From: Octopus bimaculoides
Lineage: Eukaryota
Assembly: GCF_001194135.2 (NCBI RefSeq)
Contig: NC_068984.1
Location: 71,126,402 to 71,190,401, forward strand
DNA: 64,000 nucleotides
Reading direction: 5' to 3'
The position numbers and the translations under genes are program-made. Numbering within the stretch: position 1 is the first letter of the stretch; each line of letters opens with the position of its first letter. Positions 59,483 through 60,202 of the stretch are shown here, one piece after another. Under the pieces are notes generated by a model. That model saw only the letters and a program-made list of their open reading frames with translations, was not told the DNA's origin and made no database searches.

Positions 59483-59644
59483 ATATATATATATATATAT
59501 TGTGAAGTATATTTGCCATTTAAATGTGGCTGACCCCTGCTTTTAGCCCCGGGAGGATATCTCCTCCAGCTGGCTATCGACACACTTCTGTGTCCTGCCT
59601 GTATTTGCCAAGGGAAGTTATCCTTCCCATCTTGATCTACGATA

Positions 59645-59689
59645 CGTACGTACTCGAGTTTCAGGGTTATTTCCCTTCTTCAGCGTACG
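59645..59689 (-). ncRNA. Type I hammerhead ribozyme, intact core
   Basis: cgtacg CTGAAGA aggg-aaataa-ccct GAAA ctcgag TA cgtacg: 6-bp stem I, 4-bp stem II, palindromic ACTCGAGT stem III, GUA cleavage triplet. Confidence 0.85.
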
Positions 59690-59995
59690 ACAATCGCCGA
59701 CCTTCGATGCAAAAGATATCCCTTGGGAAATATATATACGTTTTTCCAGTAAAATTATTCACTGATATCGAAAAACTGAAAACAAGCAATGTTAAATCTC
59801 TGAACGATGTATTAACAGTAACTGCACGATAAAGTGAAGTATATTTGCCACTTAAATTTGACTGACCCCGAGGGGTGGATGTTACTGTTGCTTTTAGCCC
59901 CACGAGGACATATCCTCCAGCTGGCTATCGACACACTTCTGTGTCCTGTCTGTATTTGCCAAGGGAAGTTATCCTTCCCATCTTGATCTACGATA

Positions 59996-60041
59996 CGTAC
60001 GTACTCGAGTTTCAGGGTTATTTCCCTTTCTTCAGCGTACG
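59996..60041 (-). ncRNA. Type I hammerhead ribozyme, intact core, one extra A before stem II
   Basis: cgtacg CTGAAGA a aggg-aaataa-ccct GAAA ctcgag TA cgtacg. Confidence 0.8.
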
Positions 60042-60202
60042 ACAATCGCCGACCTTCGATGCAAAAGATATCCCTTGGCAAATATATATAAGTTTTTCCA
60101 GTGAAATTATTCACTGATATCGAAAAACTGAAAACAAGCAATGTTAAATCTCTGAACGATGTATTACTGTTAATACCTCGTTCAGAGATTTAACATTGCT
60201 TA

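What the first reader, a model, noticed from the sequence alone, without database searches (positions are those of the whole stretch)
59502..60201. Young tandem dimer with two intact hammerheads bounding a 351-nt non-coding monomer: candidate cephalopod retrozyme/circRNA element
Seen: two near-identical units on the minus strand, each with a complete type I HHR core (CUGAAGA/GAAA/GUA, 6-bp stem I, 4-bp stem II, palindromic ACUCGAGU stem III). Predicted cuts at 60002/60001 and 59651/59650 would release a 351-nt RNA. The unit has no recognisable ORF but several hairpins (gggaag/cttccc, gagga/tcctc) and a 13-bp stem (atttgccaaggga/tcccttggcaaat) enclosing the ribozyme. The element lies in (TA)n and its 5' end is a 35-nt inverted fragment. 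Known: Penelope-like elements carry minimal HHRs with palindromic stem III in their terminal repeats and often have inverted 5' ends; animal non-LTR retrozymes are tandem HHR monomers of a few hundred nt that yield circular RNAs. Inferred: a recently active non-autonomous self-cleaving retro-RNA family; I do not know of this family being described.
Basis: partly seen in the sequence, partly recalled or inferred. Interest (0 to 1): 0.85.

Follow-up and report, generated by a model that had tools for sequence, protein, structure and literature searches.

The report
Hammerhead-ribozyme retrozyme dimer in (TA)n
A short non-coding mobile element carrying two intact-looking self-cleaving hammerhead ribozyme motifs sits in a TA microsatellite, probably in an octopus genome; it is a new family of an already known class (animal "non-LTR retrozymes"), and its RNA cleavage and circular RNA remain untested.

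Summary
On the minus strand, 60200→59502, lie a 34-36-nt inverted fragment, a 5'-truncated unit and a full unit. The units are 96.5% identical, with 1-nt and 19-nt indels, and (TA)n flanks both ends. Each unit carries a complete type I hammerhead: CGUACG-CUGAAGA-(A)AGGG-AAAUAA-CCCU-GAAA-C-UCGA-G-UA|CGUACG. The cuts at 60002/60001 and 59651/59650 are 351 nt apart.

Generic hammerhead descriptors find only these two sites in 64 kb, against about 0.003 or fewer expected. Rfam hammerhead models do not match, even at E≤10. Two ribozyme domains co-fold into the double hammerhead with an 8-bp palindromic helix III. The monomer folds well (z −4.6) through a ~45-bp extension of helix I.

No frame is open and no protein homology was found, except a 54-aa Octopus bimaculoides "uncharacterized protein". 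That protein is the antisense translation of a diverged copy, so the family exists in octopus.

The element fits the published definition of metazoan non-LTR retrozymes (Cervera & de la Peña 2020). Its insertion shape matches the Penelope-like-element hallmarks: partial tandem, 5' snap-back inversion, (TA)n target.

It is a new member of a known kind. Recency, copy number, cleavage and circRNA could not be tested.

The parts
60201..60245 (.). (TA)22 microsatellite flanking the 5' end of the element (minus-strand sense)
   Evidence: TRF; sequence
60167..60200 (-). Inverted 5' fragment (34 nt; 36 nt if the ambiguous 'ta' at 60165-60166 is counted). It is the reverse complement of unit positions TACTGTTAATAC..CATTGCT and forms a snap-back hairpin with the start of unit 1 (4-nt loop ACAG).
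   Evidence: the repeat finder I2/I3; alignment A1. The weak sub-threshold Rfam miRNA hits here are just this hairpin.
59834..60166 (-). Unit 1, 5'-truncated. It lacks the first ~19 nt (TTTATCGTGCAGTTACTGT) of the unit and ends ...GGCAAATATACTTCAC.
59996..60041 (-). Hammerhead 1: CGUACG-CUGAAGA-A-AGGG-AAAUAA-CCCU-GAAA-C-UCGA-G-UA|CGUACG. It has an extra unpaired A (about 60027-60029) 5' of helix II. The predicted cut is between 60002 and 60001.
59870..59888 (-). 19-nt segment (ACAGTAACATCCACCCCTC) present in unit 1 and deleted in unit 2. The octopus copy behind P0002 has the undeleted form.
59502..59833 (-). Unit 2, the complete unit (332 nt because of the 19-nt deletion). It joins seamlessly to the 3' end of unit 1 and ends ...ACTTCAC next to (AT)10.
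59645..59689 (-). Hammerhead 2: CGUACG-CUGAAGA-AGGG-AAAUAA-CCCU-GAAA-C-UCGA-G-UA|CGUACG. The predicted cut is between 59651 and 59650.
59651..60001 (-). Predicted 351-nt RNA released by double cleavage. GC is 41% and every frame on both strands has stops. MFE is -106.9 kcal/mol (z -4.55), against -90.5 (z -2.91) for the antisense strand.
59954..60001 (-). 3' strand of the ~45-bp imperfect helix that extends HHR helix I (monomer positions 1-48). It pairs with 59684-59732.
59684..59732 (-). 5' strand of the long helix-I extension (monomer positions ~270-318), just upstream of CUGAAGA.
59481..59500 (.). (AT)10 flanking the 3' end of the element. It separates the element from the next repeat (family B).

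Best explanation
This is one retro-insertion of a short (~351-nt), non-coding, non-autonomous element of the animal 'non-LTR retrozyme' type, most likely in an Octopus genome.

Shown from the sequence: 1.9 head-to-tail units; a type I hammerhead motif with an intact core in each unit; a seamless unit junction; a 34-36-nt snap-back inversion at the 5' end; (TA)n on both sides.

Inferred mechanism:
1. A transcript spanning both units folds its two hammerheads, either singly (2-bp helix III plus tetraloop) or as a double hammerhead with an 8-bp ACUCGAGU/ACUCGAGU helix III.
2. It cuts after GUA at 60002|60001 and 59651|59650.
3. [quoted passage not shown]
4. A circular or multimeric RNA of this kind was the template for target-primed reverse transcription at a (TA)n tract. 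That gave more than one unit of cDNA, and a template switch or snap-back made the inverted 5' end.

The enzyme was most likely supplied by an autonomous Penelope-like element. I cannot say whether this particular copy is transcribed or still cleaves.
For: Motif:
- The complete core is present (C3-A9, G12-A14, A15.1-U16.1, H17=A), with three helices of the canonical metazoan type I geometry: 6-bp helix I, 4-bp helix II, 2-bp helix III with a palindromic tetraloop. PMC4209133 and PMC7229834 describe this form.
- It occurs only at these two sites in 64 kb, with about 0.003 or fewer expected.
- Co-folding two domains gives the double hammerhead as the MFE: -34.1 kcal/mol against 2 x about -13.

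Class features (PMC7229834):
- The monomer is 351 nt; mussel repeats are 350-390 bp and axolotl repeats 330/350 bp.
- It is a tandem dimer with 41% GC.
- It has no LTR, no tRNA-like part and no coding capacity.
- It is strongly self-paired on the HHR strand (z -4.55 against -2.91 antisense).
- A 19-nt indel variant parallels the ~20-nt indel of coral retrozymes.

Retro-insertion:
- Unit 2 carries 5' sequence that unit 1 lacks, and the junction is seamless. The template therefore had ...ACUUCAC continuous with UUUAUCG..., meaning it was circular or multimeric.
- The partial tandem, the inverted 5'-truncated piece and the (TA)n target are the insertion hallmarks listed for PLEs in PMC8557442.
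- PLEs are the proposed mobilisers of retrozymes (PMC7229834; bioRxiv 10.64898/2026.07.22.740005).

Family beyond this locus:
- UniRef100_A0A0L8IHK6 of Octopus bimaculoides is the antisense translation of a diverged copy.
- Its FQGYFPSSA stretch fixes C3, G5, A6, G8, A9, G12, A14 and A15.1, assuming Ser = TCN. Codons just 3' of the cut differ in 9 of 13.
- By parsimony, helix I pair 2.4-1.4 changes from U-A to G.U.
Against: - No Rfam hammerhead model matches, even at E<=10 on an 81-nt slice.
- The 10.1-11.1 pair is A-U, not G-C, and unit 1 has an extra A. Activity may therefore be low. Only 1 of 9 Xenopus retrozyme dimers cleaved in vitro.
- There is only one locus in the window. No DNA of any other copy could be obtained, so there is no real covariation test, copy number or age estimate.
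- The conserved codon run in P0002 is not statistically compelling on its own.
- No PLE reverse transcriptase or GIY-YIG gene, and no min-HHR, is present in the window. The RT remnants present are LINE-type (RVT_1 + zf-RVT).
- 5' inversions and AT-rich targets also occur with LINE machinery.
- The 3' end of the insertion is not at the HHR site, so the HHR did not define the template end.
- No expression data are available.
Confidence: 0.72

Rival explanations
1. It is the remnant of an autonomous Penelope-like element. A heavily 5'-truncated insertion kept only the HHR-bearing terminal (pLTR) region, and this was later partly duplicated locally by unequal crossover. There was no independent retrozyme family and no circRNA step. 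This is the route to retrozyme birth proposed in bioRxiv 10.64898/2026.07.22.740005.
For: PLE insertions are mostly 5'-truncated and carry HHRs near their 3' ends, with partial tandems, inverted 5' pieces and (TA)n bias. Xenopus retrozymes are sister to PLE pLTRs. No second copy of the unit exists in the window.
Against: The complete unit runs from the unit junction to the 3' end in 332-351 nt, with no room for, or trace of, RT/GIY-YIG coding sequence. Unit 2 contains 5' sequence absent from unit 1, and the junction has no flanking (TA)n. Unit 2 therefore cannot be a copy of unit 1, so any local event must have been a partial duplication of unit 2. The HHR has the canonical retrozyme geometry, not the minimal PLE form.
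Confidence: 0.13
2. It is a SINE-like non-autonomous retroposon mobilised by a LINE rather than a PLE. The hammerhead is a passenger or relic that plays no part in making the transposition template. (TA)n is a tail or AT-rich target, and the 5' inversion arose by twin priming.
For: The only RT remnants in the window are LINE-type (RVT_1 + zf-RVT). A neighbouring HHR-less repeat family (family B) shows the same features in two copies: a 3' end on (TA)n and 5' inverted duplications. The 3' end of the insertion is about 150 nt away from the HHR cut site.
Against: Insertions longer than one unit with a seamless junction are what a circular or multimeric template predicts, and are not typical of SINEs. 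There is no tRNA/5S/7SL head and no poly(A). Both HHR cores are intact although the units have diverged by 3.5%. HHR-bearing short tandem units are documented to make circRNAs in coral, mussel and axolotl.
Confidence: 0.1
3. It is not a functional ribozyme at all: a chance or decayed hammerhead-like motif inside an ordinary duplicated repeat, or a duplication created by mis-assembly.
For: Rfam models are silent. The 10.1-11.1 pair is atypical (A-U). The window comes from a gapped draft assembly with 10 N runs.
Against: Descriptor hits are expected about 0.003 times or fewer per window, yet the motif occurs in both units with all core positions intact. The units differ at 11 sites and by 2 indels, so they are not one sequence assembled twice. 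The nearest N run is about 11 kb away. The octopus relative keeps the core codons.
Confidence: 0.05

Closest known systems
Metazoan non-LTR retrozymes (Cervera & de la Peña 2020, NAR, PMC7229834), especially Mytilus galloprovincialis repeats of 350-390 bp and the axolotl Rtz_353/HHR_Amex2 family
   Same: Each unit has a type I hammerhead. Units are ~350 nt, arranged in tandem, with low GC. There is no LTR, PBS, PPT or ORF. The RNA is highly self-paired, with the HHR placed at the end of a long helix. Helix III is 2 bp with a tetraloop. The base of helix II is non-G-C (U.U in HHR_Amex2, A-U here). Indel size variants of about 20 nt occur.
   Different: The sequence is unrelated to anything retrievable, and no cephalopod retrozyme is described in the searchable literature. 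There are only 1.9 units at this locus. Expression and circularity are untested. Rfam models do not detect the motif. The insertion boundaries are unusually legible: (TA)n on both sides and a 5' snap-back.
Penelope-like elements and their pLTR hammerheads (Cervera & de la Peña 2014, PMC4209133; Craig et al. 2021, PMC8557442)
   Same: The insertion architecture matches: partial tandem, adjacent inverted 5'-truncated piece, microsatellite (TA)n target. An HHR is present, and a palindromic helix III allows a dimeric ribozyme.
   Different: There is no RT/GIY-YIG ORF. The whole unit is about 351 nt. The HHR is the canonical 6/4/2-bp form, not the minimal PLE form (long helix II, short helix I, little or no helix III).
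Newt/salamander satellite 2 and Schistosoma Sm-alpha hammerhead repeats
   Same: Repeats of ~330-350 nt carry type I HHRs. Helix III is weak and palindromic, and the double-hammerhead mechanism applies (Forster et al. 1988, as cited in PMC4209133). From memory, Schistosoma also has a 4-bp helix II with an A-rich 6-nt loop.
   Different: Those form very large arrays or high-copy SINE-like families with G10.1-C11.1 and are recognised by Rfam. Here there is a single short dimer with A10.1-U11.1.
Plant LTR retrozymes and viroid/satellite circRNAs with hammerheads
   Same: HHR-bounded monomers are released from multimeric transcripts, circularised by a tRNA ligase, and form compact self-paired circles.
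   Different: Those use type III HHRs, have LTR/PBS/PPT, are 600-1000 nt with high GC, and are mobilised by Gypsy elements (retrozymes) or replicate RNA-to-RNA (viroids).

Membership tests
Hammerhead ribozyme, type I | Conserved core: C3 U4 G5 A6 N7 G8 A9, G12 A13 A14, A15.1-U16.1, H17 not G | tested here: met
   CUGAAGA ... GAAA ... UA| is present in both units.
Hammerhead ribozyme, type I | Three helices around the core, with helix I open-ended | tested here: met
   Helix I 6 bp, helix II 4 bp, helix III 2 bp plus tetraloop. Descriptor scans hit only these sites; folds.
Hammerhead ribozyme, type I | Match to curated covariance models (Rfam Hammerhead_1 and clan) | tested here: not met
   No hammerhead hit at gathering score or at E<=10, even on 81 nt.
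Hammerhead ribozyme, type I | G10.1-C11.1 at the base of helix II (typical, not obligatory) | tested here: not met
   The pair is A-U in both units, and unit 1 has an extra unpaired A. Natural retrozyme HHRs with a U.U mismatch there still cleave, but weakly.
Hammerhead ribozyme, type I | Site-specific self-cleavage | not testable with these tools
   Needs in vitro transcription of monomer and dimer.
Hammerhead ribozyme, type I | Covariation or conservation of helices across family members | tested here: inconclusive
   The only relative is a protein-level antisense translation (P0002). The core codons are identical, and helix I pair 2.4-1.4 is inferred to change from U-A to G.U. Helix III becomes NCCNGA, which cannot be resolved without DNA.
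Metazoan non-LTR retrozyme | Short tandem repeats (about 150-450 bp, dimers to multimers), each with a type I HHR | tested here: met
   1.9 units, 351 nt between cut sites.
Metazoan non-LTR retrozyme | Low GC (<45-50%); no LTR, PBS or PPT; non-coding | tested here: met
   GC is 41%. All six frames have stops. There are no homologues apart from an antisense pseudo-ORF and no tRNA-like part.
Metazoan non-LTR retrozyme | Monomer RNA predicted to be stable and highly self-paired | tested here: met
   -106.9 kcal/mol, z -4.55; circular fold -104.2.
Metazoan non-LTR retrozyme | Dispersed multi-copy family in the genome | tested here: inconclusive
   No other copy in the window. One diverged copy is inferred in O. 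bimaculoides. No eukaryotic genome database was available.
Metazoan non-LTR retrozyme | Expressed as linear and circular RNA of unit length | not testable with these tools
   Needs RNA-seq, northern blots or RNase R treatment.
Penelope-like element (autonomous) | ORF with a telomerase-like RT and a GIY-YIG endonuclease | tested here: not met
   No such ORF lies in or next to the element. The window's RT remnants are RVT_1 + zf-RVT, 36 kb away.
Penelope-like element (insertion signature) | Partial tandem (pLTR), adjacent inverted 5'-truncated copy, microsatellite (TA)n target | tested here: met
   compared with the description in PMC8557442.

The most novel reading that the evidence does not exclude
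This locus preserves an unusually clean insertion scar of a retrozyme: more than one unit of cDNA, a seamless junction, a snap-back 5' inversion, and (TA)n on both sides. If the same scar recurs genome-wide, and the unit's end matches an octopus PLE terminus, it would be direct genomic evidence in an invertebrate. It would show that retrozyme circles or multimers are copied by PLE-type target-primed reverse transcription at TA microsatellites. The adjacent HHR-less family B has the same scar and an invariant GAAAC-GUACGUAC block resembling half a hammerhead. It would then be a sister lineage that lost or never completed the ribozyme, showing that the ribozyme is dispensable for mobilisation.
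Probability: 0.25. Interest if true: 0.6.

Novelty: new member of a known kind. Interest (0 to 1): 0.4.

Why it matters
Retrozymes are the only known genome-encoded route to circular RNA through self-cleaving ribozymes in animals. What mobilises them is still argued from co-occurrence and, in frogs only, from pLTR similarity. A cephalopod family would extend the class to a lineage where it has not been described. The readable boundaries of this copy give a testable prediction about the mobilising enzyme: TA-microsatellite targeting with 5' snap-back. This remains an incremental addition, not a new kind of element.

Tried and rejected
- Rfam: the whole window at gathering score, 1.1 kb at E<=10, and 81 nt at E<=10 gave no hammerhead. 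The only matches were sub-threshold miRNA-like hits, which are the 5' snap-back hairpin and the (TA)n tract.
- TRF does not report the 351-nt period, because there are fewer than 2 copies with indels.
- Searching the 109-aa sense pseudo-ORF against 5.8 billion proteins gave nothing.
- A metagenome scan with the HHR pattern gave 18 loci. None has helices I and II or any homology to the element, so they are chance matches in unrelated sequence. The viral contig scan gave 0.
- Exact look-up of window ORFs and of P0002 in the contig index found nothing on record.
- A re-search with P0002 returned only itself, so no DNA of a second copy could be read.
- The RT-fragment search, meant to identify the organism, gave one 50%-identical ENA hit and was uninformative.
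- A literature search for the exact HHR sequence gave 0 papers. 'Retrozyme' with octopus or cephalopod returned only incidental mentions.
- The idea that the neighbouring 142-nt inverted repeat is a relative of the HHR unit was rejected. It shares only 16 of 17 nt, and shuffles reached the same score. It belongs to a separate repeat family with a second copy at 10.85-11.19 kb.
- tRNA-SINE was rejected.
- An open reading frame running around the circle (351 = 3 x 117) was rejected: every frame has at least 2 stops.

Full report
**1. What is in the sequence**

Read on the minus strand, the region 60245→59481 has five parts:
- (TA)22 at 60245-60201 (TRF).
- A 34-36-nt fragment at 60200-60165/7. 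It is the reverse complement of the unit's own TACTGTTAATAC...CATTGCT and forms a hairpin with a 4-nt loop against the start of the next part (repeat finder I2/I3; alignment A1).
- Unit 1 at 60166-59834, which lacks the first ~19 nt of the unit.
- Unit 2 at 59833-59502, which is complete.
- (AT)10 at 59500-59481.

The units align over 313 nt with 11 substitutions (96.5% identity, K2P 0.036). There are also a 1-nt indel and a 19-nt segment (59870-59888) missing from unit 2.

No N run lies within 11 kb, and the two units are clearly different sequences. Assembly duplication is therefore unlikely.

**2. The ribozyme motif**

Both units contain CGUACG-CUGAAGA-(A)AGGG-AAAUAA-CCCU-GAAA-C-UCGA-G-UA|CGUACG.
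- All invariant hammerhead positions are present.
- Helix I is 6 bp, helix II is 4 bp with a 6-nt loop, and helix III is 2 bp with a UCGA tetraloop, giving the 8-nt palindrome ACUCGAGU.

I wrote a strict generic type I descriptor and a relaxed minimal-HHR descriptor. Each finds only these two sites in the 64-kb window. Composition-matched shuffles give 0/300 and 0.003 hits per window.

Co-folding two ribozyme domains yields the double hammerhead as the minimum-energy structure. It has an intermolecular 8-bp helix III, at -34.1 kcal/mol against about -13 for each domain alone.

The motif also has A10.1-U11.1 instead of G-C, and unit 1 carries an extra unpaired A before helix II. Both deviations have natural precedents:
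- An unpaired nucleotide 5' of helix II occurs in PLE and some canonical HHRs (PMC4209133).
- A U.U mismatch at the base of helix II occurs in axolotl HHR_Amex2, which still cleaves, weakly as a monomer and well as a dimer (PMC7229834).

Catalytic competence is therefore likely but not assured.

**3. The monomer as an RNA**

- The 351-nt product has stops in all six frames, so no ORF runs around the circle.
- GC is 41%, and there is no tRNA-like module.
- On the HHR strand it folds to -106.9 kcal/mol (z = -4.55; 0 of 100 shuffles as good). As a circle it folds to -104.2 kcal/mol.
- The antisense strand is 16 kcal/mol weaker (z = -2.91). This fits a structure selected at the RNA level on the ribozyme strand.

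**4. Relatives elsewhere**

- There is no other copy in the window (blastn).
- The sense pseudo-ORF has no match among 5.8 billion proteins.
- The antisense pseudo-ORF has exactly one match among 1.84 billion representatives: P0002, 54 aa, E = 1.7e-4. This is UniRef100_A0A0L8IHK6, an "uncharacterized protein" of Octopus bimaculoides.
- tblastn shows that P0002 aligns only to the two units, on the antisense strand, with a frameshift. It is a gene-model artefact laid over a diverged copy of this family.

The family therefore exists in octopus, and the window is plausibly octopus DNA. The window is AT-rich, rich in microsatellites, gapped, and carries LINE debris.

Because the amino acids fix two of every three antisense nucleotides, some inference is possible:
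- FQGYFPSSA, the antisense of C3 through A15.1, is identical. That fixes C3, G5, A6, G8, A9, G12, A14 and A15.1, if Ser is TCN.
- 9 of the next 13 codons differ.
- By parsimony, helix I pair 2.4-1.4 goes from U-A to G.U.
- Helix III becomes NCCNGA. This could be the alternative palindrome UCCGGA, but it cannot be resolved without DNA.

This is suggestive only. A 9-codon identical run is not statistically compelling given 56% overall identity. No DNA of that copy could be fetched.

**5. How it got there**

Unit 2 begins with sequence that unit 1 lacks (TTTATCGTGCAGT...). The unit 1/unit 2 junction is seamless, with no flanking (TA)n. The template therefore already had ...ACUUCAC joined to UUUAUCG..., so it was circular or multimeric. 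Unit 2 cannot be a later copy of unit 1.

Four features match the insertion signature described for Penelope-like elements (PMC8557442):
- more than one unit copied,
- 5' truncation,
- an adjacent inverted 5' piece,
- a (TA)n target.

PLEs are the proposed mobilisers of animal retrozymes (PMC7229834; bioRxiv 10.64898/2026.07.22.740005).

Caveats:
- No PLE gene or minimal HHR is present in the window.
- The RT remnants at 18.1-19.4 kb and 22.2-23.4 kb are LINE-type.
- Twin-priming inversions also occur with LINEs.
- The 3' end of the insertion lies about 150 nt from the cut site, so the ribozyme did not define the template's end.

**6. Comparison with what is known**

The element meets every sequence-level criterion of metazoan non-LTR retrozymes (PMC7229834):
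- a type I HHR per unit,
- 150-450-bp tandem units (mussel 350-390 bp; axolotl 330/350 bp),
- low GC,
- no LTR, PBS, PPT or ORF,
- a highly self-paired RNA,
- a ~20-nt indel variant like that of coral retrozymes.

Its HHR has the "canonical metazoan type I" geometry (6/4/1-2 bp with a palindromic loop; PMC4209133), not the minimal PLE variant.

What could not be tested: expression, circularity, cleavage, copy number and co-resident PLEs.

Hammerhead_1 hits have been counted in a cephalopod genome (235 in the giant squid; PMC6962438). However, no paper in the searchable library describes cephalopod retrozymes or this sequence.

**7. Verdict**

It overreaches on "recently active", and its Rfam check is negative.
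- This is a new family of a known kind. The readable insertion scar is the most useful feature.
- Confidence is about 0.7 that it is a retrozyme-type insertion, about 0.5 that a PLE mobilised it, and about 0.5 that this family makes circRNA today.
- Interest is 0.4.

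Noticed in passing
window 58970-59482 (minus) and 10808-11200 (plus): A second non-coding repeat family ('family B', unit ~340 nt) lies directly next to the HHR element. 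Copy 1 is an inverted [S1+S2] piece (59253-59482) abutting (AT)10, plus a direct [S2+S3] piece ending in (TA)n at 58970-58995. This makes a 142-nt, 96% inverted repeat (59099-59240 / 59341-59482). Copy 2 has a 45-nt snap-back hairpin at its 5' end (10808-10902) and also ends on a TA-rich tract. It shows the same 5' inversion and (TA)n 3' end as the HHR element, so it may share the same mobilising machinery.
   Followed up: partly
window 59428-59444, 59137-59153 and about 11026-11056: All three family B arms share an invariant block, TTGTACGAAACGTACGTACTGCTATAACCT. Its GAAAC-GUACGUAC resembles the 3' half of the hammerhead (GAAAC[UCGA]GUACGUACG), and 16 of 17 nt match the HHR cut-site region. 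There is no CUGANGA or helix II upstream, so no complete ribozyme. Shuffles reached the same alignment score, so it could be a relic half-core or chance.
   Followed up: partly
window 18139-19419 (+) and 22241-23441 (-): Two reverse-transcriptase remnants lie in opposite orientation (Pfam RVT_1; zf-RVT at 19150-19419) within a GC-richer block (0.47). They are LINE-type, not Penelope-like. The best database relative is only 50% identical.
   Followed up: partly
window 60131-60206: The 5' snap-back hairpin of the element draws sub-threshold Rfam miRNA hits (mir-4536, 39.6 bits against a gathering score of 76; MIR6217; mir-384). These are generic hairpin matches, not miRNA genes.
   Followed up: yes
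window 14236-14692 (-): Stop-free segments here read by eye like the C-terminal part of a mariner/Tc1 transposase (QDSAPCHTS...). Pfam gave no hit at E<=0.01, so this rests on recollection only.
   Followed up: partly
window 40397-40726 (-): A 110-aa segment has a weak helicase-like match (Pfam Herpes_Helicase, E = 0.002, below cut-off). It may be a Helitron/Pif1-type remnant next to a 10-N gap at 40747-40756.
   Followed up: no
window 3032-48301 (10 N runs): The assembly gaps fall into two classes: exactly 10 N, and 155-269 N. Abundant compound microsatellites are also present. This looks like a short-read scaffolded draft assembly, so repeat copy number and tandem length in this window should be checked against long reads.
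   Followed up: no
window 59552-59561 vs 59903-59912: Four of the 11 unit-to-unit substitutions cluster in one small hairpin (GGAGGA-loop-UCCUCC). Two change the loop (UAUG to GAUA) and one lengthens the stem from 5 to 6 bp in unit 2. This hints that the hairpin is maintained, but the sample is too small to test.
   Followed up: no
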